Part shown: positions 326 to 11,540 of the stretch, in pieces
Position numbering within the stretch: position 1 is the stretch's first letter
How the letters are laid out: each line of letters begins with the position of its first letter
Origin: Basidiobolus meristosporus CBS 931.73
Taxonomy: Eukaryota; Fungi; Basidiobolomycota
Length of the DNA stretch: 64,000 bases
Direction of reading: 5' to 3'
Assembly (NCBI GenBank): GCA_002104905.1
Contig: MCFE01000310.1
Coordinates: 1 to 64,000 of the forward strand
Notes under the pieces: generated by a model
The model's input: the letters and a program-made list of their open reading frames with translations, nothing else
What the model was told of the DNA's origin: nothing
Database searches by the model: none
Position numbers and translations under genes: made by a program

Positions 326-1756
326 TCACAATTCATTCAGTGCACTTTCTGGTCTTCCATGGGTGTACGTGTGGTTCAGAATATTTAAAACGGTTGCCTG
401 GGAATACAATGATGGTTCACCAATGGTATTCGACTAGCTCACTACGTCAGGAACTTACCTCGAATCTGTGGAAAGTCCCGGTTGTTTGCCAACCAATATG
501 AGGCAACAATGTTACTCGATCACAGGAGAGCAGATAAGGGTCCACCATTGGCTCGTTTTCATAGACATCCAGTCCCGCGGCAAAGATCTTGATTTGGGGT
601 TAGAACTGACATCTCTGAGTTGTATGAACTCCACCACTGACCTTGCCTGACTTCAAACCACTGACCAAAGCGGCTTCCTCAATTATCTTTCCTCGCCCAG
701 TGTTGACGATAACCACATTATCCTTCATTTTCTGTAAGGATTTTTCGTTGATTAGATGGCAATTGTCCTTATTGAGGGGAGCGTTGATGCTGAGGATGTC
801 AATGGTCGCAAGGAATTCATCAAGCGGCAAATATGTTGCTTGGTATAATTCCTCCTCTAATGAGAGTTAGTTCAACTATTTGGGTTCGTGATGAGGACAA
901 TTAGCTATCCAACCAGATTTACTCAAAGGCTGACGGTTATGGTAGAATATTTCCACATCAAATCCGAGGGCACGTCTAGCCACCGACTGGCGAGAGGTAC
1001 ATCAGAACCCCAACTTGTATGCTTGTTCGGAGCAACTCACGTACCTTTCCGATCTTTCCCATGCCCAAAATACCTAACTTCTTTCCCTTCATGTCCATTC
1101 CCATCTGGATGCCATCTCTCCATAGGCCTATTGTAAAGTTAAGAAATGACCAGGAGCAGCTCTAACCTTGGACAAGAGTACCTTTCCGCAATAATTGCTC
1201 GGCTTGATACGTTTGCCTACACGCTGAAAGAATCAGGTGAACGGCTATCTCAGCAGTGGAATCGCATGCTCCACCAGGCACATTGGTGACCCAGATTCCT
1301 AAGCCAAAGGATTAGTTCAAGATCCGGATTTATTGTTAACTGGCCATACCTCTGCTTGTGGCTTCTTCCAGATCAACATTATCGTACCCAGCTGCACCAA
1401 TGGCGATCAGCTTTAGGCTGTCAGGCAACAGAGAAAAGATCTCATGGTCGAATCTTTCGATCTATGGTTTGAAGAGGGTCAGATTGAACAACAAGATGCG
1501 TAAACCATCACCATACTATTTCGAATTCTATGAACAGAATGGCGAATAGATCATCGTAGTAGCCTTCTTTGAGATTCTTTATAAACATCTCTCTGTTTGG
1601 TTCGGTATGGAACTGCCGTAGATAATGAGTTAGTAAAGAAATGGAGAAGATCAGCAGTATACTTACTTTGAAATTAAATTCCGATGACAACTCTTCGTAT
1701 AACTCACTGGCATGCTCCAGGGTACCCGAAACGAGAACTGTAGGCTTGATGGTCAT
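326..1756 (-). CDS. D-isomer-specific 2-hydroxyacid dehydrogenase (glyoxylate/hydroxypyruvate/hydroxyphenylpyruvate reductase-like), multi-exon
   Basis: Spliced translation gives MTIKPTVLVSG..., WVTNVPG, Rossmann KLGILGMGKIG, FYHNR, NTGRG (Arg), AAGLDVYENEP (Glu), LLPHIG (His). Stop TGA at 328-326 after GT-AG introns read manually. Confidence 0.9.
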
Positions 1757-2257
1757 GGTTGGTATGATGACCGTTTTACAACAGCAGAGCGGTATTTAAA
1801 TTTCGTTCTCATGGTAAGCTTCGCCGGACCAATATATACAAAGAGTAGAGCAACCCGGGATAGGTCAAGAATCTTCTGAAACCAATGAGCGTGTAACAAC
1901 AACATTGTCGATCATATCCTCTATGGGGTAAATAACGTTACAGATGGTTACGGTAATAAGCGGTATCTTACTGTGTTGTAGTACCAACTTTGCCACCAAT
2001 TTTGGGGGAATGTTTCCCGATTCTTAATGCAGTGGCAGAATTGATGAAGGTGGTCATGATGGGTACTGTGTGCAACAGGTACAAGCTCTCCATTCCGAAC
2101 AACCATTTTCCATTGGGTGCACCGGGCATCCCATTCGGCTGCTACTATTTGTCCGTAGTTTGGAGGCCCGAACTTGATACCAAACTGGAAGGCTTCTAGA
2201 TAGATATAAGAAGGAAGGATTTTCTATCAACACCAACCATCAAAGCTTCCAAGTAAA

Positions 2258-3932
2258 ATGACTGTTGAAGAACCCACTTCATTGATTGAGGTCAACTCCT
2301 TTGTCGCAAATCTCCCGGTTACAGATGGTTCGTCGCAAAGCAATATCACCGGGTGCCCGAAAACTAATCCTTGCTCTCTAATAGTCAGATCTTTATTCAA
2401 CCAAGCTACAATTCAGTACCAATCCAGTAACCTTGGCCATGGATTCATGAAGTAAGCGGCATCCGTGAAGTGCTGAATACCTTGGTTCTAACGAAGCATA
2501 CAGTTTTCCAGTTCCCGAGTTCATAAAGGAAGCTGCAGCCGGCATCATCCAAGCTGATGAGTTCAACCAGTATGCCCCTCCCCGTGGAGTGCCAAGGCTT
2601 CGCCGGGTACACTTTTCACAACTCCCATTGGGTTTTCACACCAGACCCTAACTGTTTCCTAGGCACTTGCAAAGGATTATTCACCAAAGATTGGACGGGA
2701 GCTTGATCCCGAGAAAGAGATCATCATCACGGCAGGAGCCAACGAAGGCTTACTCAGTATTATGCACTCATTTTGCAAGCCAGGTAATAAGTAACACCTT
2801 GTTGCACTTTCGGGGATTTCCCGGCTAAACAGCTTTGCAGGCGATGAGGTGATCATGTTCGAGCCATATTTCGATGCCTATGTGGTAAGATCTTTGTCGA
2901 CGCCATCCATAAGTGGTTTCTAACAGTCGTCTTTAGTCTCATATCAAAATGCTCAATGCAACCCCTGTCTACTGCCCATTACGCATCAACCCCAGCACCG
3001 ACTGTAGCAAGCCATACTCGTCATCTGATTACTACATTGATATTTCTGAACTGCGTTCCAAAGTATCTCCAAGAACCAAGATGATGATCCTCAATTCACC
3101 GCATAATCCGTTTGGGAAGATATTTAGCAGAGAGGAGCTCCGGGAGATCGGCCAAGTAGCCATTGAGAACAACATTCTCATCGTTAGTGATGAGGTGGTA
3201 AGTGTGGATAAATCCAGCCCATCATCTGGCAACACCGGTTTAATCCGCATATAGTATGACAGGGTCGTTTTCTCGCCCAACCAGCTGGTGCGAGTGAACT
3301 CTATCCCTGAACTGTGGGATCGTACTATAACTGTTTACAGCGGAGGAAAGAGCTTCGGGATCACTGGATGGCGTATCGGGTGGGTGGTTGGACCACAGAA
3401 ATTAATGCGATACGTTACTGGGGCACATGCTGAAATGGTGTACTGTGCCAACGCCCCCCTACAGGTAGGCATTACTGCAGGTCATAACGGGTCTTTCATT
3501 CCACTTATTTCCCACGATTAGGAAGCAGTTGGGCTTGCCTTTGAGCAAGCGGAATCCAACGGATTCTTCACTAAGCAGCTGGCAAAGTACACCCGTCTCT
3601 GCCACAAACTCATGGATGCCTTCGATAGAGTTGGCTTGCCATACGTCATTCCGCAAGGGGGTATTTTCTTGCTAGTGGATACCTCCAAGGTGCGTATCCC
3701 AGCCCACTTGGAGTTCCCTGAAGAAATTGCATCCCGGGGTGAAACGTACAAGATGTGCTACTTCATCACACGAGATATTGGGGTCACCGCTATACCCGCA
3801 ACTGAATTCTATTCCTCTAAGCATGCCTACCTGGCACAGAACATCCTTCGCTTTGCATTCTGCAAGACCGATGACATCATCGATGAGGCAGCCGAACGTC
3901 TCCAAAAACTCACCCAGTACATAATGGACTAG
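2258..3932 (+). CDS. PLP-dependent class I/II aminotransferase, kynurenine/glutamine transaminase (Bna3/KAT-like), multi-exon
   Basis: Exons encode SLFNQ...NLGHGFM, QYAPPRG, ITAGANEG, FEPYFDAY, LNSPHNPFGK, SDEV, the PLP-Lys motif SGGKSFGITGWRIGW, and LRFAFCK. Confidence 0.9.
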
Positions 3933-4293
3933 ATCCATCGATGTATGACAAGATAATGAACTAAAATCACCATTGTATGACAAGATCGCATAAATCTCAA
4001 TAAATATCAGTAATCCTAACTTGGCACTTTACTCCCACGGTAACACAGTATTCACAACAATCAGTTAAGCTTAGTTTATTGAGGAAATCATAGCTATTTA
4101 TCATGTTGGTAGTGTTGTGGAACAGTAGACCAGTGATCCATCGAGGCAAATTTTATTAGCGACTGTAAAGGTGCAGGATTCAGACAGAATGATAGCAGCG
4201 GCGATGGTGTAGGATTAAGCCAAAATAATAGCAGTTGTGACAGTGTAGGATCACGCCATAATTAAGGTTTCATTTTGTTTTATTCACCGGACA

Positions 4294-5823
4294 TTAGTTG
4301 GCCATATTGACTTTAGATACATTCTCATGTCGTGGGATAAATTTGGCATCGTAAGGCAATGGACTGAAACTCTTGGTAAAGCGAACAGTCTCGACATCGA
4401 TGATATGCCCTGGTTCGTGGGGTTCGATTCGGAATGCCCACAAAAGTCTAGAGATGACACAGAACAGTTCACGCTCCGCCAAGAAGATTCCTGGGCATCC
4501 ACGGCGACCAATACCAAAGGCGAAATGATCCCGCTTATGGATGTCGCCGATGTGAGCAAGGTTCGCGGCCGACTCCTCAACGCCGAGATAACGATCAGGG
4601 TTGAATTGATGAGGATCCTTGTGTCGCTTAGGATCAAAGTCAATGGTATACGAGTTCAGCAACATGATAGTGTTTTTAGGAATGAAGTAGCCCTTGTAGG
4701 TATCATCATTGGAGGTAGCATGGGCAATTCCTAGGAAGGACTTTGGACGATAACGCATGGTCTCCTTGATGACGGCGCGGAGGTAAGGCATCTTGCTCTC
4801 GTCACTTGGAAGAGGAACACGATCACGACCGACTACTTGGTCCATCTCCTCATGAATTCTCTCCTGAATTCCAGGATGATTGGCCATTAATGCGGTGAAC
4901 CACATAAGCATAATTGATGGACCATCTGAGCCGGCAATCATCATAGCAGCACACAGATTCACGATATCAAGCTCTTCCAAATCGTACTCGCCCTGGTTCT
5001 CCAGGATATGCTTTGCAAAGCAAGGAATTGCCACTCCTTGCTCTATCTCTTCCTTCAACTGATTCAAGAACTTAAGGGCAAGTCCCTCTCTGCGATCGCG
5101 GAGTGCTGTGGCCTTTGCGCGTAGACTGGTAGGAAGCCATCTCAGGATGGGGAATAGATCTAACATTCTGGATGCCTTATCAACGGAAGTGATGCCGAAC
5201 ATCTCGTCGTTAACGTACTTCAATTCCTCAATCACAGGATCGTTGACATCTTTAACGCGATAGCCGAAAGACATGGTCAAGATGGTGTTGAAAGAGAATC
5301 TGACCAGACTAGTGGCAGGGTCAAACGATTTTGCGCCGGATTCACCTTGCTCAAGCAAGCTTTGTACCAAATCCCTAGACTCCTTTTCGATGATTGGCTG
5401 GTATGACTCGACAACATATGGGTGAAGGGTGCTATGGACAAGCTTACGGAGAAGTCTCCAATAGTCACCGTAAGGGGCCATGGTAATGGAGCGACCACCA
5501 CGAGCAATAATCTCGGTAGCAAGATAACCTTGGCTACGGGAATTATAATTACGCCCACGGATAATAAAGAGATCCCTGGCAATGTCAATGTCGTTGACAA
5601 CGACAATCAGCTGAGAACCAACGCGGACGGATATCAAAGGCCCGTATTTTTTGCTCCACTTTGTAAAAGTCTCGTAAGGCAAGTTTCCGACATCCAAGAG
5701 ACTGCCGATGATCGGCCAACCACGGGGCCCTGGGGGAAGAGGGCCAGGATAGCGACGACTATGGTAGATACCAAGGCCAATTAAAATTAGACCTAGTATC
5801 ACGGCGATGGTGTTATACTCCAT
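4294..5823 (-). CDS. Cytochrome P450 (microsomal, clan CYP64/CYP2-like), intronless, 509 aa
   Basis: N-terminal TM anchor, PPGPRGWP hinge, ExxR (ETMR), PDRY, heme motif FGIGRRGCPG. I-helix reads AGSDGPS. Confidence 0.95.
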   Translation of the reverse strand: MEYNTIAVILGLILIGLGIYHSRRYPGPLPPGPRGWPIIGSLLDVGNLPYETFTKWSKKYGPLISVRVGSQLIVVVNDIDIARDLFIIRGRNYNSRSQGYLATEIIARGGRSITMAPYGDYWRLLRKLVHSTLHPYVVESYQPIIEKESRDLVQSLLEQGESGAKSFDPATSLVRFSFNTILTMSFGYRVKDVNDPVIEELKYVNDEMFGITSVDKASRMLDLFPILRWLPTSLRAKATALRDRREGLALKFLNQLKEEIEQGVAIPCFAKHILENQGEYDLEELDIVNLCAAMMIAGSDGPSIMLMWFTALMANHPGIQERIHEEMDQVVGRDRVPLPSDESKMPYLRAVIKETMRYRPKSFLGIAHATSNDDTYKGYFIPKNTIMLLNSYTIDFDPKRHKDPHQFNPDRYLGVEESAANLAHIGDIHKRDHFAFGIGRRGCPGIFLAERELFCVISRLLWAFRIEPHEPGHIIDVETVRFTKSFSPLPYDAKFIPRHENVSKVNMAN

Positions 5824-6103
5824 TGTGTGTGAGGATTGGACTCGTAGATTTGTCTATTTATATAGAAATCTATGGACCGGCCTTCATCTAACCATAAAGC
5901 CCGTATCAACCAGGGCCCCATACAGAAAGTTACACCACCGCTTACTTTTGTCTAACAGGAAATTTCCACCAGTCGGCCACCTCGCTTTGCCTGGAAATAT
6001 GAAACTTCTCGACGACAGCAAATAGGCGGCGTGATTCTTCCGTTTGAGCACCCACATAATTGCTAAACCAGGCAAGGATCGTTCATCACCATATTAGTAT
6101 CAC

Positions 6104-6120
6104 TTACCCATGATGGGTAA
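6104..6120. promoter_or_regulatory. Perfect inverted repeat TTACCCAT-G-ATGGGTAA in the P450/E1 divergent promoter; candidate dimeric TF site
   Basis: 8-bp arms with a 1-bp spacer, read directly from the sequence. Function is inferred. Confidence 0.3.
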
Positions 6121-6655
6121 ATACCCTCGCCGGGAGAAATGTAAGTTACCGCATCGTACATCCTACCCGTCCAGGAGATATGCATGATTGGATTCGGAGA
6201 TGACAAAAATCAGCACAGGAGAACGTTGTTACTCAAATTATTCATATTGGCTCGAACCTGACACTCTGGGGATGGTTCTTACGCCTGTGTCCAGGGACTT
6301 GAGTGTTCACAGGATGATCTTCCCTTTTTTTGGGTTCCGAAGAAGCCGGCAACATTTTAGGTGCCCAAGGTACATGAGTAACTTTCTTTGGAATGCTTTG
6401 ACCCTGTAGAATCGTAAACGGAGTAATACAATGCTATTGCACGACATCCACACCAAGCTATTTTCAACAACGGAGAGATACTTGTACAAATCAGTTATGA
6501 TACGAGGCGCAGATGGGAGATAATTGGTGATTCTTGAAAAGCTCTCACCGAACTCTTCTCATGGAAACTAATAAATAGCGCAAAACGAGTGCATCTCAAC
6601 TCATCGGCAATAGATCTTCCGTTTTCAAGAACTTTAACCTGGCCAGCGCATCAAG

Positions 6656-9636
6656 ATGACTGTATCCTATCCTGTTGAATCCACCTTCTACGGCCCTCGC
6701 AGCCTCAAGAAAGCTCCAGTGTCAGAATGTTGGTACCTTCTCTGGCCTCAAGCTCCGGCCTCCCAAAGCTAACGCATCTTTTCCAACTTAGACTCTGCCG
6801 CTGAAATCGAAAATCGTATTGAGAACAGCAACCTCGTTCGCCTTGTGGAAGCCTATCGCACATTTGGCCATCGTGGAGCTAAGATCGATCCTCTGGGCCT
6901 CTGGATTCGCGAGTGAGTGATCTATAGCACAGTGAATGCATAGTAGAACCTACCAACTAAACTACGTCCTAGCCGCGATGCATCCCTCAATCCAGGATTA
7001 TATGGATTAACCGATATGGATCAAATTTTTAACCTGGAAGGTACATGCACCATCCTCATGAGAAAGTGAAACAGTGACTAACGCTGCTGCCAACCTAGGG
7101 ATCGTCAAGTTGAGCGGACTCAAAAAAGCCACCCTATCTCAGATCATTGATCACTTGGAGAAGACCTACTGCGGCCACCTGGCCTTTGAATTCATGCACA
7201 TTGCGGTAAGATTACCTACGCCAACCAACCACCACCTGGTATTGTACTAATCCTGCTCAGGATGACAATGTTCGCAGGTGGTTTGCCGACAAGGCCGAGA
7301 CCTACCTGGCCACCACCTTCAGCACACAGGAGAAGGAGAAGTTCCTGGAGCTTATCACCAAATCTGAAACGTTTGATCACTTCATGCTTCGTGAGTGCGG
7401 TCGCTTAAAGCAATTCAGTATTGAGGGTACCGAGAGTGCCCTGATCGCCCTCCAACAGGTTTTGGAGCATGCCAGCAAGAATGGAGTTCTGGATGTGGTC
7501 ATGTGCTTAACCCATCGCTGCCGTATGCAAATTATGATGGAGATCCTCGGCGTTCCACAAGCCTATTTATTCAGAAAATTCCAAGGTCTCTCGGAATTCC
7601 CTGATGACATTCCATCCCACATCATTGGTGATCTTGTATACAATGCTCAAGCATCCATCGATCTGAATTTGGGTGGGGAGAACCCATTGCATGTATCTGT
7701 GGTCCCCAATCCATGCCATCTGGAACTTGTCAACCCGGTGGCCCTGGGAAAGGTCCGTGCTAAGCAGGCTGACTACCTTTCTCGGGAAACTGAGGATTAC
7801 AAGGTGGAAGACATGGTAATGAGCGTCCAGATGCATGGAGACGGCGCTTTCACTGGCCAAGGTGTAGTGACTGAGACTTTGGGGCTTACCAACCTCCCTC
7901 ATTTCACCACTGGAGGCAGCATCCATATAGTTTTGAACAACCAGATTGGTGTTTCCACTGATCCCATCAATGGTCGTTCTACCATGTACTCTTCCGACAT
8001 TGGTAAGATGGTGGAAACCCCAGCGATCCATGTGAACGGTGACCACCCCGAATTGGCTGCTATCGCCGGAAGAATTGCTGTCGATTATCGCAAGACGTTC
8101 GGCAAGGACATTATCATTGACATGATTACTTATCGTCGCCGCGGCCACAACGAGACTGAGGATCCATACTACACTCAGCCGGTGATGTACAAGGAGATCG
8201 AAACCCACGACGGTCTTCCAGTTGTGTACTCCAAGCAGTTGCTTGAGGAAGGAGCCGTCGATTCTATGAACTTGATCGAGGAAACCAAGAAAACCCACGA
8301 CAAGTATTTAACTGAATGCTTCCAGAACGCCTCCAAATTCAAGGTGGAGCCATCTCATCTTCTTGGAAAATGGAAGTCCATGGTTATTCCCGAGGAAACC
8401 ATCAGTAAAATGGACACTGGCGTTGATTTGGAAATTCTCCATAAAGTCGGACTCCAATCGGTCACTGTTCCTGAAAGCATAGAGGTCAACGCCAAGGTCA
8501 ATGAGGTGAACATTCAGCCCCGTTTGAAGCAGTTACAGCAAAGAGACAACATTGGTTACCCAGCAGCCGAGGCAATGGCCCTTGGCTCCCTCCTACTTGA
8601 AGGATACGATGTTCGCATTTGTGGACAGGACGTTGCTCGTGGTGTCTGTATTCCCAGACACACCATGATCACTTGCCAAAAGACTAACACCAAATACGCC
8701 CCATTGAACAAGTTGTCTGACAACCAAGGGCGTTTGGAATTGGTAGATAGTCCTCTTGGCGAATTGGCGGTAATGAGTTTCGAATACGGCATGTCCTTGG
8801 AAACCCCCAATCGCTTGAATATTTGGGAGGCTCAATTGGGCGACTTCTACAATGGAGCTCAGGAAGTCATTGATGGCTTCATCTCTGGCGGAGAAGAGAA
8901 GTGGCTCAGACAGTCAGGATTGGTCCTTGTGTTGCCTCACGGATACGATGGTGCCGGTCCAGAGCACACTTCCTGCCGTATTGAAAGATTCCTTCAGCTT
9001 TCCAGCGATCGCTACGACGTGAATAACCCTGACATTCCTAACAATGTCAACTGGCACGTAGTCAACTGCTCGACCCCCGCACAATACTACCACGTTTTGC
9101 GTCGTCAAATGAAGCGTAATTTCCGCAAACCCCTCATTGTTGCCGGCCCTAAGAAATTGATTCGTCTTCCAAATGCTGTCTCAAGCATGGACGACATGGC
9201 CCCCGGTACATCTTTCCAACCAGTAATTGCCGATGGTGAGGCTGATATCAGCTCAGTCCAAAGAGTTGTATTTGTGTCCGGGAAGTTGTACTACGAATTG
9301 CTTGAGCAAAGAGAGAAGAGAGGTCTTATCAACCAAGTTGCGTTGGTAAGAGTTGAGGAATTCTCACCCTTCCCCAAGAATGACCTTGAGGTTGAGATCC
9401 GCAAGTATGCCACTGCTACTGAATTCGTTTGGTGCCAAGAGGAAACCCAGAATGGCGGTGCCTGGAACCATATGGAGCCTAGATTCAATCAAATCTTGCC
9501 CAACGGACATAGAATCAAGTATGTTGGCCGTGGACCTTGTGCTGCTCCCGCTAATGGTATCTACATGATGCACCTTCGCGAACAAAATCAAATCCATGAG
9601 GATGCTTTCACACTTGCCCCCTCAACTTCTGCTTAG
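6656..9636 (+). CDS. DHTKD1: 2-oxoacid dehydrogenase E1 (OGDH/DHTKD1 family), divergent; several 5' introns
   Basis: 5' exons encode NLVRLVEAYRTFGHRGAKIDPLGL and FEFMH. The long exon has NPCHLE, the ThDP motif HGDGAFTGQG...LNNQIG, YRRRGHNE, WEAQLGDF, LPHGYDGAGPEHTSCR and WCQEETQN. Confidence 0.88.
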
Positions 9637-10047: not shown

Positions 10048-10824
10048 CTACAATTTACGCCTTTTCCGTTGCTGGCCCCGCTCGGTAGGCTGATGCTGAT
10101 TCGGTACACGCTTTAATGAATTACCCTGAATAGGTGAGGCAAACCAGTTCCTTATTTTTTGAACAAAGGAGCTGGACTTCCCGCTATCGACAGTGTTTCC
10201 ACAGGAGCTACCTGTACAGAGGAAATTGAAGCAATGGATTTTGCTCTTCTCTTCTTTCGACTGGTAAGCTTCGGGAAAAGTGGTTCTATTTTTCTCTAAA
10301 GGGATATTTTCCTTCTCCGGTGAGGCTTTAAGTAGGGTTCGAGAGGGAGGGCGTCTTGGAGAGTTTTTCGAAGCTCTGCAAGTTGAAGATTTGGGCTGAG
10401 AGGATCTCCTTGAAACTGGTCTAGCACTGGCCTCGTTTTGGTGAAAGTTTGGTAGGAATACGGAGTTATTATGATATGGGAAACACTTCGGTGGCGGTGG
10501 CGCTTGACAGTACCATACGAAATTCGTATCCTTCGATGCTTTACTTTTTTCTTTAATAGGGCGATACGCAGTGGGATTACGATTGGTCTCGCTTTCAAGT
10601 GGCGGGGTAAAAAGGGCTGACGGGTATGGTAATGGAGTATTATGGTCAATGGACTTATTTGGGGATGGTTCGATCGTCTCCTCCTCTTGGAGTTCAGCGG
10701 ACCTTTTCCTAAAAGTATTGAAACTACAAGAGGAATGGCTGGAGACTGAGCCACTCACTGTGCGACCTTTACGAGAGGATTGAGTTGAATATCCAGAGTC
10801 CGAATTGGTAGCGTCCTCATTCAT
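10048..10824 (-). CDS. Hypothetical Ser/Pro/Arg-rich, probably disordered protein (258 aa) with a basic C-terminal NLS-like RKRRKL
   Basis: Single ATG-initiated ORF filling an intergenic gap. No family motif recognised. Confidence 0.55.
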   Translation of the reverse strand: MNEDATNSDSGYSTQSSRKGRTVSGSVSSHSSCSFNTFRKRSAELQEEETIEPSPNKSIDHNTPLPYPSALFTPPLESETNRNPTAYRPIKEKSKASKDTNFVWYCQAPPPPKCFPYHNNSVFLPNFHQNEASARPVSRRSSQPKSSTCRASKNSPRRPPSRTLLKASPEKENIPLEKNRTTFPEAYQSKEEKSKIHCFNFLCTGSSCGNTVDSGKSSSFVQKIRNWFASPIQGNSLKRVPNQHQPTERGQQRKRRKL

Positions 10825-11540
10825 ATTTCTAATCGGAGCGTAGTATGGTGCAGGTCGTTATGTTGTGTTTATACTTCAAGAGTCAAAGCACTAGTAAAGG
10901 AGGAACTCACCAAGAGAGGTTAACTACTCTTGAGAGCATGTAGTCTCAATCTATACTTTCGAAGCTTCAAACTCCTCAGTATCAATCAAACAAAGCCAAC
11001 GAAACAGGAAAAACAGAATATCACACAAAATTGTCTAATAACAGAGCTTTAAATAAGATGTATTCACATCGGCTAGTGAAAATCACTTCTAATATCAGAA
11101 TACCAATTCGCAGCCAGGAAAAAGAAAAGCAAAGCACCTATTGAGTGGTATCACAAGGCAATCAACATACTCACCATGGGGTTGCATTGCTACCATGTAT
11201 CATTCTATAACTCTCACGTTGACTAAATGTGTTAATCTTGATCAATCATGTGACATGGATGTATAAGCTTTTCTATATGCTTATAAATGCGCTTGTGACA
11301 TGCATTGTATTCTCGGGTAGAGCCAAGTGCGTGCATGAAATCATATATATGCATGGCGGATGTTATCTCGGCTACCCTACTTATTTCGAGAAATGGCAGA
11401 CGCGAAAACCACCAGATCAAATTAAATATGGATCTCGAGTTTATTCATTTGAAATGGGCCAATTGTGATGGATTAGTTTGCCATGAAAATCAACGGAAAC
11501 ACGATTAGTGCTGCTCAACAACGGACACACCCAATACAAT

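What the first reader, a model, noticed from the sequence alone, without database searches (positions are those of the whole stretch)
326..9636. Candidate undescribed 2-oxo-acid / amino-acid metabolic gene cluster built from two head-to-head gene pairs
Seen: four consecutive enzyme genes form two divergent pairs, 2-hydroxyacid reductase(-)/aminotransferase(+) sharing about 500 bp and P450(-)/E1(+) sharing about 830 bp. Established: Bna3/KAT-type transaminases turn aromatic or hydrophobic amino acids into 2-oxo acids, GRHPR/HPPR-type reductases reduce 2-oxo acids to 2-hydroxy acids, and ThDP E1 enzymes decarboxylate them. All three therefore act on the same class of intermediate, and P450s of this clan often hydroxylate small aromatics (for example phenylacetate 2-hydroxylase CYP504). 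Both the E1 and the P450 carry unusual active-site substitutions, as expected for specialised copies. Inference: a co-regulated pathway of the type amino acid -> 2-oxo acid -> hydroxy acid or aldehyde/acyl product -> oxidised product, for catabolism or specialised metabolite synthesis. I know of no described cluster with this composition.
Basis: partly seen in the sequence, partly recalled or inferred. Interest (0 to 1): 0.82.

Follow-up and report, generated by a model that had tools for sequence, protein, structure and literature searches.

The report
Four-enzyme 2-oxo-acid gene cluster candidate
Four neighbouring enzyme genes in the fungus Basidiobolus meristosporus, three of them shown to be specialised rather than housekeeping copies, probably form a small pathway for an amino acid and its 2-oxo acid, but co-expression and the substrate are untested.

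Summary
The window is the start of contig MCFE01000310.1 of Basidiobolus meristosporus CBS 931.73. It carries four adjacent genes in two head-to-head pairs:
- a D-2-hydroxyacid dehydrogenase (326-1756, minus strand);
- a Bna3/KAT-type aminotransferase (2258-3932, plus);
- a P450 (4294-5823, minus);
- a DHTKD1-type E1 (6656-9636, plus).

Three of the four are specialised copies.
- **E1:** it belongs to a clade of seven proteins among the 120 best relatives. The clade keeps the catalytic histidines but has replaced all three ligands of the substrate's far carboxylate.
- **P450:** it has only two orthologues. All three lack the I-helix threonine.
- **Aminotransferase:** it is about 53% identical to the canonical Basidiobolus BNA3, over its largest exon.

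Evidence on linkage is mixed. In a 'Borealophlyctis nickersoniae' assembly the P450 orthologue lies head-to-head with a 2-hydroxyacid dehydrogenase, and that assembly also holds a rewired E1. Against a cluster, the other E1 paralogue loci and two canonical BNA3 loci lack these partners. Synteny with B. ranarum is uninformative.

I put a real cluster at about 0.5. The scan had already noted the rewired E1 at another locus of this genome (s1-199500).

The parts
326..1756 (-). D-isomer-specific 2-hydroxyacid dehydrogenase gene with several exons (328 aa), of the glyoxylate/hydroxypyruvate-reductase type
   Evidence: Gene call and Pfam families PF00389 and PF02826. The best solved relatives of the exon pieces are glyoxylate reductases 3wnv, 6bii and 2dbq, and D-lactate dehydrogenases. 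The motifs that in this family carry the catalytic Arg and His are present: VNTGRGK and LLPHIGW (role assignment from my knowledge of the family).
1757..2257 (.). 501-bp divergent spacer between the dehydrogenase and the aminotransferase
   Evidence: Gene calls. It shares one 9-mer, CCATGAGAA, with the P450/E1 spacer and with its B. ranarum counterpart. This is weak: 30 of 500 shuffles do as well.
2258..3932 (+). Bna3 / kynurenine-aminotransferase-family class I aminotransferase gene (428 aa), a divergent paralogue
   Evidence: Pfam PF00155 on three exon pieces. The best solved relative is yeast BNA3, 3b46, at 1.7e-29, followed by KAT I and KAT III. The piece 3522-3929 is 53% identical to the canonical Basidiobolus BNA3 proteins P0447, P0421 and P0422, which are 83-87% identical to each other. 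The motifs NSPHNPFG, SGGKSF and the C-terminal RFAF are present; from my knowledge of KAT enzymes they carry the PLP-site Asn, the Schiff-base Lys and the carboxylate-binding Arg. 82 of 102 near-invariant family columns are retained.
3933..4293 (.). 361-bp convergent spacer between the 3' ends of the aminotransferase and the P450
   Evidence: Gene calls.
4294..5823 (-). Intronless microsomal-type cytochrome P450 gene (509 aa) from a very small orthogroup
   Evidence: Pfam p450 at 7.8e-92. The N-terminus is hydrophobic and followed by a PPGP hinge. Only B. ranarum (about 91-92% identity) and P0122 (62-71%) are close; the next relatives are 36-38% identical.
4906..4947 (-). P450 I-helix AMMIAGSDGPSIML, in which the conserved acid-alcohol threonine is replaced by Gly-Pro
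   Evidence: Alignment A1: all three orthologues have AGSDGP, while nine relatives have [AG]Gx[DE]T[TS] or a similar sequence. Coordinates checked. The Cys-ligand motif FGIGRRGCPG (within 4483-4524) and ETMR (within 4744-4770) are canonical.
5824..6655 (.). 832-bp divergent spacer between the P450 and the E1
   Evidence: Gene calls. It is poorly conserved with B. ranarum apart from short islands such as TTTATATA, AATATGAAACTTC, GTTACTCAAA and TTCTCATG.
6656..9636 (+). DHTKD1-derived ThDP E1 gene (914 aa, P0001) with a rewired substrate pocket
   Evidence: Pfam E1_dh, Transket_pyr and OxoGdeHyase_C. The best solved relative is human DHTKD1, 6u3j, at 5e-239. In the tree it pairs with B. ranarum P0002 as sister to the other four B. 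meristosporus rows in the tree.
7405..7437 (+). E1 'region 1', LKQFSIEGTES: the equivalent of human Tyr190 is Phe
   Evidence: The role of Tyr190 comes from PMC7340257 and PMC8146983.
7621..7656 (+). E1 motif IIGDLVYNAQAS: human Ser263 becomes Tyr, and His264 (His in every canonical DHTKD1 and OGDH-type row checked except two Coemansia paralogues) becomes Asn
   Evidence: His264 contacts the substrate's epsilon-carboxyl in the post-decarboxylation intermediate (PMC8146983).
7933..7962 (+). E1 motif LNNQIGVSTD: human Tyr370 becomes Val
   Evidence: Tyr370 and Tyr190 together sandwich the epsilon-carboxyl.
8623..8667 (+). E1 motif GQDVARGVCIPRHTM, where canonical enzymes have RGTFS[QH]RH
8932..8991 (+). 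E1 'loop 3', LPHGYDGAGPEHTSCRIERF: the catalytic histidine (human His708) is retained
   Evidence: The equivalents of His223 (in HRCRMQ, 7504-7536) and His435 (in GHNE, 8131-8157) are also retained. Roles.

Best explanation
The four genes are a small metabolic gene cluster, possibly cut short by the contig end. It is built from specialised copies of enzymes that all act on one amino acid / 2-oxo acid pair.

Proposed route (inferred, not shown):
1. The Bna3/KAT-type aminotransferase interconverts an amino acid and its 2-oxo acid.
2. The glyoxylate-reductase-like dehydrogenase interconverts that 2-oxo acid and the D-2-hydroxy acid.
3. The DHTKD1-derived E1 decarboxylates the 2-oxo acid on ThDP. 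The product would be an acyl group passed to a lipoyl-E2, or an aldehyde or acyloin if the enzyme works alone in the cytosol.
4. The P450, which lacks the usual I-helix threonine, oxidises the substrate or a product.

The E1 keeps its catalytic histidines but has lost all three ligands of the distant carboxylate. The 2-oxo acid is therefore probably not 2-oxoadipate or 2-oxoglutarate. More likely it has a neutral, hydrophobic or aromatic side chain.

What is shown: gene identities, arrangement, paralogue status, the active-site changes, and a partial recurrence of linkage in a second genome. What is inferred: the common substrate, the order of steps, co-regulation, and whether the pathway is catabolic or biosynthetic.
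For: 1. Four enzyme genes lie next to each other with no other gene between them, as two head-to-head pairs with 501-bp and 832-bp spacers.
2. The copies are specialised.
   - The E1 clade has Tyr190 to Phe, His264 to Asn and Tyr370 to Val, but retains the equivalents of His223, His435 and His708 (residue roles).
   - The P450 orthogroup of three proteins has AGSDGP in place of the acid-Thr pair.
   - The aminotransferase is a separate paralogue. Over its largest exon it is 53% identical to the canonical Basidiobolus BNA3 proteins, which are 83-87% identical to each other. Its PLP-site motifs are intact.
3. On L006 (JADGKA010002873.1) the only close non-Basidiobolus P450 orthologue (62-71%) lies head-to-head with a 2-hydroxyacid dehydrogenase about 570 bp away. 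That dehydrogenase's exon pieces match the window gene's exons in order at 47-52%.
4. The same assembly carries P0093, the only non-Basidiobolus member of the rewired E1 clade (100% SH-aLRT). Its motifs KQFSIEG, VST and RGVCIPRH match the window copy rather than the dispersed paralogues.
5. If any of the three partner families had appeared beside that P450, I would have counted it. My rough estimate of the chance of that is below 1%.
6. L006 and L007 do not look like Basidiobolus DNA. Their GC is 0.52-0.54, their GC3 is 0.63-0.69, and their tetranucleotide correlation with Basidiobolus loci is at most 0.18, against 0.40-0.62 with a main contig of that assembly. The linkage therefore recurs in a different genome and in a different arrangement.
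7. None of the four predicted N-termini looks like a mitochondrial presequence, and the P450 has a membrane anchor. This would fit one cytosol/ER-facing pathway (inference).
Against:
- At least five other rewired E1 copies lie at four other B. meristosporus loci (L003, L004 with two copies, L005, L092). None has an aminotransferase, a P450 or a 2-hydroxyacid dehydrogenase nearby. This enzyme type therefore does not need the partners in cis.
- The canonical BNA3 loci of B. meristosporus and Syncephalis lack such partners too.
- Synteny with B. ranarum (P450, E1, unknown gene, CAF1) is ordinary congeneric collinearity. That contig ends 296 bp past the P450 in repeats, before any aminotransferase.
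- The L006 dehydrogenase is not demonstrably a strict orthologue. Over the best-conserved piece the window gene is as similar to an ascomycete glyoxylate reductase, 3wnv (about 51% by my count), as it is to L006 (47%).
- No pathway regulator, transporter or core biosynthetic enzyme was seen to the right within about 10 kb.
- The shared promoter 9-mer is not significant.
- The origin of L006 and L007 (genuine chytrid DNA, a contaminant, or a transfer) is unresolved.
Confidence: 0.5

Rival explanations
1. The adjacency is chance or historical. Basidiobolus meristosporus has many duplicated metabolic genes. Four of them happen to lie side by side without forming a pathway or being co-regulated.
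For: - The rewired E1 family has at least six copies scattered over five loci with unrelated neighbours.
- Head-to-head pairs are common in compact fungal genomes (established knowledge).
- There is no regulator or transporter nearby, no significant shared promoter motif, and no expression evidence.
- The only closely related genome shows collinearity that extends into plainly unrelated genes.
Against: - Three of the four genes are rare or divergent specialised copies.
- Two very rare gene types, the P450 orthogroup and the rewired E1, co-occur in just three assemblies among billions of proteins.
- The P450 orthologue again sits next to a 2-hydroxyacid dehydrogenase in a compositionally different genome.
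Confidence: 0.3
2. It is a lysine/tryptophan catabolic module of the known type. The aminotransferase would make 2-oxoadipate from 2-aminoadipate, or act on kynurenine. The E1 would be a true 2-oxoadipate dehydrogenase feeding glutaryl-CoA through the mitochondrial E2o/E3. The reductase would make 2-hydroxyadipate as an overflow product.
For: - The E1's best solved relative is human DHTKD1 (5e-239). The aminotransferase's is BNA3/KAT.
- Both families belong to tryptophan/lysine degradation (established knowledge).
- No canonical DHTKD1 from Basidiobolus appears among the 120 best relatives, so some copy may have to do this job.
- A Tyr190Phe change alone lowers human E1a efficiency only about 5.7-fold (PMC8146983).
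Against: - All three residues that contact the epsilon-carboxyl of 2-oxoadipate (Tyr190, Tyr370, His264) are replaced, and further pocket motifs are changed as well.
- The predicted N-terminus has acidic residues and no long basic presequence, unlike canonical fungal DHTKD1.
- The aminotransferase is of the KAT I/III (Bna3) type, not the AADAT/Aro8 type that usually handles 2-aminoadipate (established knowledge).
- This reading gives the P450 no role.
Confidence: 0.1
3. It is the visible edge of a larger secondary-metabolite cluster lying beyond the contig start. The aminotransferase and the 2-hydroxyacid dehydrogenase would supply a D-2-hydroxy acid building block, as in depsipeptide pathways. 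The P450 and the E1 would tailor it.
For: - The 2-hydroxyacid dehydrogenase is only 325 bp from the contig end, so the left side is unseen.
- Amino acid to 2-oxo acid to D-2-hydroxy acid is the known supply route for fungal depsipeptides (established knowledge).
- Another P450-NRPS candidate cluster has been noted elsewhere in this genome (s1-239877; unchecked).
Against: - No NRPS, PKS or terpene synthase is called within about 10 kb to the right of the E1, and none is evident in notes on the rest of the window.
- L006 shows only the dehydrogenase and the P450.
- An E1o-type ThDP enzyme has no known role in such clusters.
Confidence: 0.1

Closest known systems
Human/fungal 2-oxoadipate dehydrogenase E1 (DHTKD1, E1a) with an upstream aminotransferase in lysine/tryptophan catabolism
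   Same: The E1 fold and domain order match, and human DHTKD1 is the best solved relative (6u3j, 5e-239). The catalytic His223, His435 and His708 equivalents and the ThDP-site motifs are retained. The logic is also the same: an aminotransferase feeds a 2-oxo acid to the E1.
   Different: All three epsilon-carboxyl ligands are replaced (Tyr190 to Phe, Tyr370 to Val, His264 to Asn), and the motifs HRGRLN and RGTFSQRH are rewritten. No evident mitochondrial presequence. The aminotransferase is of the Bna3/KAT I-III type, not AADAT. The genes are physically clustered with a P450 and a reductase, which is not described for DHTKD1.
Yeast BNA3 and mammalian KAT I/III (kynurenine aminotransferase / glutamine transaminase K)
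   Same: Best solved relatives (3b46 at 1.7e-29, then 1yiy, 2zjg and 3fvs). The PLP-site motifs are retained. The gene falls within the Zoopagomycota Bna3 group in a tree of its largest exon.
   Different: It is not the orthologue. B. meristosporus has a canonical copy, P0447, on another contig. The window copy is about 53% identical to it and does not group with it. Twenty of 102 near-invariant columns differ.
Fungal catabolic gene clusters for aromatic compounds, such as the homogentisate/tyrosine cluster, and phenylacetate hydroxylase CYP504
   Same: The concept is the same: a few non-homologous enzyme genes of one degradative route sit side by side, often as divergent pairs and sometimes with a P450 (established knowledge).
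   Different: The composition is different. No ring-cleavage dioxygenase or hydrolase is present. No relationship of this P450 to CYP504 was found. An E1o-type ThDP enzyme is not a known member of such clusters.
Branched-chain 2-oxo acid dehydrogenase E1 and the Ehrlich pathway
   Same: Transamination of a hydrophobic amino acid is followed by ThDP-dependent decarboxylation of the 2-oxo acid, or by its reduction (established knowledge). This is the chemistry proposed here.
   Different: BCKDH E1 is a heterotetramer from a different E1 lineage. Here an E1o/E1a-type scaffold appears to have been re-tooled, and nothing shows that it uses an E2.
CYP73 cinnamate 4-hydroxylase and the CYP1/CYP2/CYP17-like microsomal P450s
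   Same: Nearest solved structures (6vby at 8.9e-57; 4r20, 2hi4 and 6oyu at about 1e-55). It has an N-terminal anchor with a PPGP hinge, and canonical ExxR and Cys-ligand motifs.
   Different: Identity is only about 30%. The I-helix threonine of the acid-alcohol pair is replaced by Gly-Pro in the whole orthogroup. In other P450s, loss of this threonine goes with atypical oxygen activation or substrate-assisted catalysis (established knowledge).

Membership tests
DHTKD1 / 2-oxoadipate dehydrogenase E1 (E1a) | E1_dh + Transket_pyr + OxoGdeHyase_C architecture, and closest similarity to DHTKD1 rather than OGDH | tested here: met
   Pfam. PDB: DHTKD1 6u3j at 5e-239 against OGDH-type enzymes at about 1e-190. 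The gene sits on the DHTKD1 side of the tree.
DHTKD1 / 2-oxoadipate dehydrogenase E1 (E1a) | Catalytic histidines (human His223, His435, His708) | tested here: met
   HRCRMQ, GHNE and PEHTS are retained. Roles from PMC8146983 and PMC7340257.
DHTKD1 / 2-oxoadipate dehydrogenase E1 (E1a) | Ligands of the substrate's epsilon-carboxyl (Tyr190, Tyr370, His264) and the pocket residue Ser263 | tested here: not met
   The residues here are Phe, Val, Asn and Tyr. The same holds in all seven clade members and in none of the other 113 best relatives.
DHTKD1 / 2-oxoadipate dehydrogenase E1 (E1a) | Mitochondrial targeting and use of the E2o (DLST) core | tested here: inconclusive
   The annotated N-termini start at FYGxR, contain acidic residues and lack a long basic extension, unlike canonical P0006 and P0029. 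No targeting predictor was available, and an upstream exon cannot be excluded. An in-frame stop lies 18 nt before the ATG: the stop-free frame starts at 6638 and the ATG is at 6656. E2 binding cannot be tested here.
Bna3 / KAT I-III aminotransferases | Class I fold with the PLP Lys, the NPxG Asn, the Asp/Tyr pair and the carboxylate-binding Arg | tested here: met
   Pfam PF00155 on three exons. The motifs SGGKSF, NSPHNPFG, SDEV...Y and RFAF are present. Best PDB hit is BNA3 3b46.
Bna3 / KAT I-III aminotransferases | Orthology to the single housekeeping BNA3 of the species | tested here: not met
   The canonical copy P0447 lies on another contig. Identity is 53% over the largest exon, and the two do not group together.
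Cytochrome P450 | FxxGxRxCxG haem ligand loop and the ExxR motif | tested here: met
   FGIGRRGCPG and ETMR. Pfam at 7.8e-92.
Cytochrome P450 | I-helix acid-alcohol pair ([DE]-T) used for oxygen activation by typical monooxygenases | tested here: not met
   AGSDGP in the window gene, in B. ranarum and in P0122. Relatives have [DE]T.
D-isomer-specific 2-hydroxyacid dehydrogenases (glyoxylate/hydroxypyruvate reductase group) | Catalytic and NAD-binding domains, with the Arg and His catalytic residues | tested here: met
   PF00389 and PF02826. VNTGRGK and LLPHIGW are present. The best solved relatives are glyoxylate reductases. Substrate specificity was not tested.
Fungal metabolic gene cluster | Contiguous non-homologous enzyme genes that plausibly share an intermediate | tested here: met
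   Four adjacent genes with none between them. A shared 2-oxo acid intermediate is inferred from the family chemistry.
Fungal metabolic gene cluster | Linkage conserved beyond background synteny in other genomes | tested here: inconclusive
   - For: L006 has the P450 orthologue next to a 2-hydroxyacid dehydrogenase, and the same assembly has a rewired E1.
- Uninformative: B. ranarum.
- Against: none of the paralogue loci or canonical BNA3 loci has the partners.
- A metagenome scan found no further orthologues.
Fungal metabolic gene cluster | Co-regulation of the members | not testable with these tools
The promoter-motif comparison gave only a weak 9-mer.
Fungal metabolic gene cluster | Pathway-specific regulator or transporter within the cluster | tested here: not met
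   The right flank holds an unknown protein with no Pfam domain, then CAF1 and three aldolase genes. The left flank is off the contig.

The most novel reading that the evidence does not exclude
A previously undescribed cytosolic pathway module that has moved, or been retained, as a unit between Basidiobolus and a chytrid-like genome. In it an E1o/E1a-type ThDP enzyme has been re-tooled to work on a 2-oxo acid without a distal carboxylate, possibly without any E2 as a decarboxylase or carboligase. It would work together with a threonine-less P450, a dedicated KAT-type aminotransferase and a D-2-hydroxyacid dehydrogenase to make or degrade an unknown small molecule.
Probability: 0.2. Interest if true: 0.8.

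Novelty: new variant of a known kind. Interest (0 to 1): 0.6.

Why it matters
Metabolic gene clusters are well known in Dikarya but poorly charted in early-diverging fungi. No described cluster, to my knowledge, includes an OGDH/DHTKD1-type E1.

If the cluster is real, it gives a genomic context, and so a route to the substrate, for a whole clade of DHTKD1-derived enzymes. These keep their catalytic machinery but have lost every ligand for the substrate's far carboxylate. That would be a new specificity on a scaffold of medical interest, since DHTKD1 is linked to 2-aminoadipic/2-oxoadipic aciduria and CMT2Q.

It also points to a tiny P450 orthogroup with an atypical I-helix, and to possible co-inheritance or transfer of the module between distant fungal lineages.

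If the adjacency is chance, the E1 and P450 peculiarities still stand as separate, smaller findings.

Tried and rejected
1. **RNA evidence.** Co-expression is untested.
2. **Spliced models.** Under the operators' rule, the aminotransferase and the 2-hydroxyacid dehydrogenase were searched only exon by exon, by reference. The joined proteins were never built or submitted. As a result no full-length homologue search was possible for them. The B. ranarum orthologue of the aminotransferase and the paralogue count of the dehydrogenase remain unknown.
3. **Exhaustive search with the 136-aa aminotransferase exon.** The best representatives were only 49-50% identical, and none was closer. The top hit, P0241, is a 938-bp soil metagenome fragment with no useful context.
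4. **Word search with the proxy P0242.** It recovered the canonical Basidiobolus BNA3 proteins but not the window gene, which is itself evidence of divergence.
5. **Metagenome scan with the P450 orthologue alignment.** It returned 80 loci. None is an orthologue: long matches are 21-42% identical.
6. **B. ranarum contig end.** The 296 bp past the P450 stop are tandem repeats and three TTAGGG units, with no aminotransferase coding sequence. The test is inconclusive.
7. **Shared promoter motifs.** One 9-mer is shared by both spacers and the B. ranarum spacer (30 of 500 shuffles match this). Nothing is shared with L006. I rejected this as evidence.
8. **Strict orthology of the L006 dehydrogenase.** Similarity to the window gene (47-52%) is no higher than the window gene's similarity to an ascomycete glyoxylate reductase over the same piece. 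The L006 piece itself finds no solved structure at E of 0.01 or better. Inconclusive.
9. **Reading the downstream unknown gene as a regulator.** It has no Pfam domain.
10. **Literature.** No paper in the held library links Basidiobolus with DHTKD1. None of the ten listed results of the cluster search concerned Basidiobolus gene clusters. Two searches for the E. coli E1o histidine numbering found nothing, so residue roles are cited from the DHTKD1 papers instead.

Full report
**Source and anatomy**

The E1 open reading frame is 100% identical to ORX91699.1 of Basidiobolus meristosporus CBS 931.73. The window is the first 64 kb of contig MCFE01000310.1, which is 97,724 bp long.
- 326-1756 (-), 328 aa, 2-Hacid_dh;
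- 2258-3932 (+), 428 aa, Aminotran_1_2;
- 4294-5823 (-), 509 aa, p450, intronless;
- 6656-9636 (+), 914 aa, E1_dh / Transket_pyr / OxoGdeHyase_C.

The divergent spacers are 501 bp and 832 bp. A 361-bp convergent spacer lies between the aminotransferase and the P450. My own Pfam scans of exon pieces and long ORFs agree. To the right follow a small protein with no Pfam domain, a CAF1 gene and three class II aldolase genes. To the left the contig ends 325 bp beyond the dehydrogenase, so the set may be incomplete.

**The E1**

Its best solved relative is human DHTKD1 (6u3j, 5e-239), ahead of the OGDH-type enzymes. B. meristosporus has at least six copies of this gene type:
- the window copy, P0001;
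- P0003 (locus L003);
- two tandem copies of P0004 (L004);
- P0005 (L005);
- the partial P0027 (L092).

I built a quick IQ-TREE tree of 36 proteins. All Basidiobolus copies plus one outside protein, P0093, form a clade with 100% SH-aLRT support on a long stem of 1.13 substitutions per site. Within it, the window copy pairs with its B. ranarum orthologue P0002 (86% identity in that alignment). That pair is sister to the other four B. meristosporus rows in the tree (P0003, P0004, P0005 and the partial P0027).

The whole clade shares rewritten pocket motifs:

| Canonical motif | Clade motif |
|---|---|
| KRYGLEG | KQFS[IL]EG |
| HRGRLN | HR[CT]RMQ |
| GDVLSH | GDL[VL]YN |
| NNQxGYTT | NNQIGVST, NNQVSVTT or NNQINVST |
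| RGTFS[QH]RH | RGV[CF]I[PA]RH |

The DHTKD1 structure literature gives the residue roles. Tyr190 and Tyr370 sandwich the epsilon-carboxyl of 2-oxoadipate. His264 contacts it after decarboxylation. His223, His435 and His708 are catalytic (PMC7340257; PMC8146983). In this clade the three carboxylate ligands are Phe, Val and Asn, while the three catalytic histidines are kept.

Only these seven of the 120 best relatives carry the rewired set, and no canonical DHTKD1 from Basidiobolus is among those 120. They are a property of the clade, not of this copy alone. My analysis was made before I saw it, and it adds that the clade is not strictly limited to the genus.

The annotated N-termini of the clade start at FYGxR and contain acidic residues. 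They lack the long basic extension of canonical fungal DHTKD1. An in-frame stop lies 18 nt upstream of the ATG: the stop-free frame starts at 6638 and the ATG is at 6656. This suggests, but does not prove, a non-mitochondrial enzyme.

**The P450**

Pfam gives 7.8e-92. The nearest solved structures are CYP73 cinnamate 4-hydroxylase, CYP17, CYP1A2 and CYP1B1, at E of about 1e-55 to 1e-57.

Among 5.8 billion clustered proteins it has only two close relatives. One is the B. ranarum orthologue (91%, 92%). The other is P0122 (62-71% by segment). The next hits are unnamed Agaricomycete P450s at 36-38%.

The haem-ligand loop FGIGRRGCPG and the ExxR motif are canonical. The I-helix reads AGSDGP in all three orthologues where relatives have [AG]Gx[DE]T[TS]. 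I found nothing that links it to CYP504.

**The aminotransferase**

Its exon pieces hit PF00155. The best solved relative is yeast BNA3 (3b46, 1.7e-29), followed by KAT I and KAT III.

An exhaustive search with the 136-aa last exon found nothing closer than about 50%. A word search seeded with the Coemansia BNA3 protein P0242 returned the canonical Basidiobolus BNA3 proteins: P0447 from B. meristosporus, and P0421 and P0422 from B. ranarum. These are 83-87% identical to each other and 54-57% identical to other Zoopagomycota proteins. The search did not return the window gene.

Over the last exon the window gene is 53% identical to those canonical copies. It falls in the Zoopagomycota Bna3 group without joining them. 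The PLP-site motifs are intact and 82 of 102 near-invariant columns are kept. It is therefore an extra, functional-looking paralogue beside a housekeeping copy.

**The 2-hydroxyacid dehydrogenase**

It carries PF00389 and PF02826. The motifs VNTGRGK and LLPHIGW are present; in this family they hold the catalytic Arg and His (role assignment from my knowledge of the family). The best solved relatives are fungal and archaeal glyoxylate reductases and D-lactate dehydrogenases.

Its paralogue status could not be tested.

**Linkage in other genomes**

- **B. ranarum.** The 10.8-kb contig L002 shows P450(-), E1(+), an unknown gene(-) and CAF1(+), the same order as the window. This collinearity runs on into unrelated genes, so it is not evidence of selection. 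The contig ends 296 bp past the P450 stop, in tandem repeats and three TTAGGG units, before any aminotransferase could appear.
- **Paralogue and canonical loci.** None of the other E1 paralogue loci has any of the partner families. The same is true of the canonical BNA3 loci of B. meristosporus and Syncephalis.
- **A second assembly.** The informative case is assembly GCA_027604605.1, labelled Borealophlyctis nickersoniae.
  - On its 3-kb contig L006 the P450 orthologue P122 lies head-to-head, about 570 bp away, with a partial 2-hydroxyacid dehydrogenase. That gene's exon pieces match the window gene's exons in order at 47-52% identity.
  - A 2.2-kb contig, L007, carries P0093. This is the only rewired E1 outside Basidiobolus, and its motifs match the window copy rather than the dispersed paralogues.
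  - The same assembly also has a normal chytrid-type DHTKD1, P0025, on a 31.8-kb contig.
  - L006 and L007 have GC of 0.52-0.54 and GC3 of 0.63-0.69. Their tetranucleotide correlation with that main contig is 0.62 and 0.40, but at most 0.18 with Basidiobolus loci. They are not Basidiobolus DNA. Whether they are genuine chytrid DNA, another organism or a transfer is open.
  - Over the best-conserved piece, the window dehydrogenase is as similar to an ascomycete glyoxylate reductase (about 51% by my count) as to the L006 gene (47%). The L006 piece finds no solved structure at E of 0.01 or better. Strict orthology is not shown.
  - Even so, my rough estimate of the chance that the one visible neighbour of this rare P450 belongs to one of the three partner families is below 1%.
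- **Metagenomes.** A scan with the P450 alignment found no further orthologue.

**Regulation**

The P450/E1 spacer is poorly conserved with B. ranarum. One 9-mer, CCATGAGAA, occurs in both window spacers and in the B. ranarum spacer, but 30 of 500 shuffles do as well. I do not count this as evidence.

**Weighing the evidence**

For a functional cluster:
- uninterrupted adjacency of four enzymes whose family chemistries meet at a 2-oxo acid;
- three of the four shown to be specialised copies;
- co-occurrence of two very rare gene types in the same three assemblies;
- a rearranged recurrence of the P450-dehydrogenase linkage in a compositionally different genome.

Against it:
- there are no expression data;
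- the other rewired E1 copies live without these partners;
- no regulator or transporter is present;
- the status of the small contigs is unresolved.

I put a real cluster at about 0.5 and chance adjacency at about 0.3. A conventional lysine/tryptophan module and the edge of a larger biosynthetic cluster each get about 0.1.

The mechanistic proposal is inference from family chemistry and the pocket changes. An aminotransferase makes a 2-oxo acid that lacks a distal carboxylate. That acid is either reduced to the D-2-hydroxy acid or decarboxylated on ThDP, and a P450 oxidation step is attached.

**Novelty**

Clustered catabolic or biosynthetic genes are a known kind. This composition, with a re-tooled E1o/E1a enzyme and a threonine-less P450 in an early-diverging fungus, is not described in the library searched or, to my knowledge, elsewhere. 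I rate it a new variant of a known kind, with moderate to high interest that depends on the expression and enzymology tests listed.

Noticed in passing
L006:285-2976 and L007:74-2036 (GCA_027604605.1, 'Borealophlyctis nickersoniae'): Two small contigs carry the only close non-Basidiobolus relatives of the window P450 and of the rewired E1. The same assembly also has a normal chytrid DHTKD1 (P0025, L089). Their composition resembles the main assembly, not Basidiobolus. The origin is unresolved: an ancient paralogue, a horizontal transfer or a contaminant.
   Followed up: partly
L004:3332-14570 and L092:1486-5085: The dispersed rewired E1 paralogues are duplicated as an E1 + F-box-protein unit: twice in tandem on L004 and once on L092. 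Acyl-CoA metabolism genes lie a few kb away (an AMP-binding ligase and Htd2 on L004, an enoyl-CoA hydratase on L092).
   Followed up: no
P0001-P0005 N-termini (window 6656 onward): Basidiobolus rewired E1 models start at FYGxR with acidic residues. They lack the long basic presequence of canonical fungal DHTKD1 (P0006, P0029), so these enzymes may not be mitochondrial.
   Followed up: partly
P0099 and P0107 (Coemansia javaensis and Coemansia sp. RSA 2336): A second Coemansia DHTKD1 paralogue has GDMLVD instead of GDVLSH (Ser263 to Val, His264 to Asp) while keeping the other canonical motifs. P0099 lies next to a canonical copy, judging by consecutive locus tags on one 19-kb contig. This looks like an independent, milder pocket change.
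   Followed up: no
L002:1-200 (B. ranarum contig JASJQH010000662.1): The contig starts with about 20-bp tandem repeats (CTATTCTTGTCTATTTCAAT-like) and three TTAGGG telomere-type units just downstream of the P450. This probably explains why the assembly breaks there.
   Followed up: no
L090:8001-15953 (B. meristosporus contig MCFE01000482.1): The canonical BNA3 (P0447, modelled at only 383 aa, probably truncated) has a second class I/II aminotransferase gene (510 aa) 4.7 kb downstream.
   Followed up: no
window 10051-10857 (-) and L002:6147-6914 (-): A serine-rich protein with no Pfam domain is conserved in position next to the E1 in both Basidiobolus species. It is modelled as 107 aa in one and 255 aa in the other, so one of the models is probably wrong.
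   Followed up: partly
window 1804-1815 and 6554-6563; L002 spacer 1827-2682: The 9-mer CCATGAGAA / TTCTCATGG lies about 50-95 bp upstream of the dehydrogenase and E1 start codons and is kept in the B. ranarum P450/E1 spacer. It is not statistically significant (30 of 500 shuffles).
   Followed up: partly
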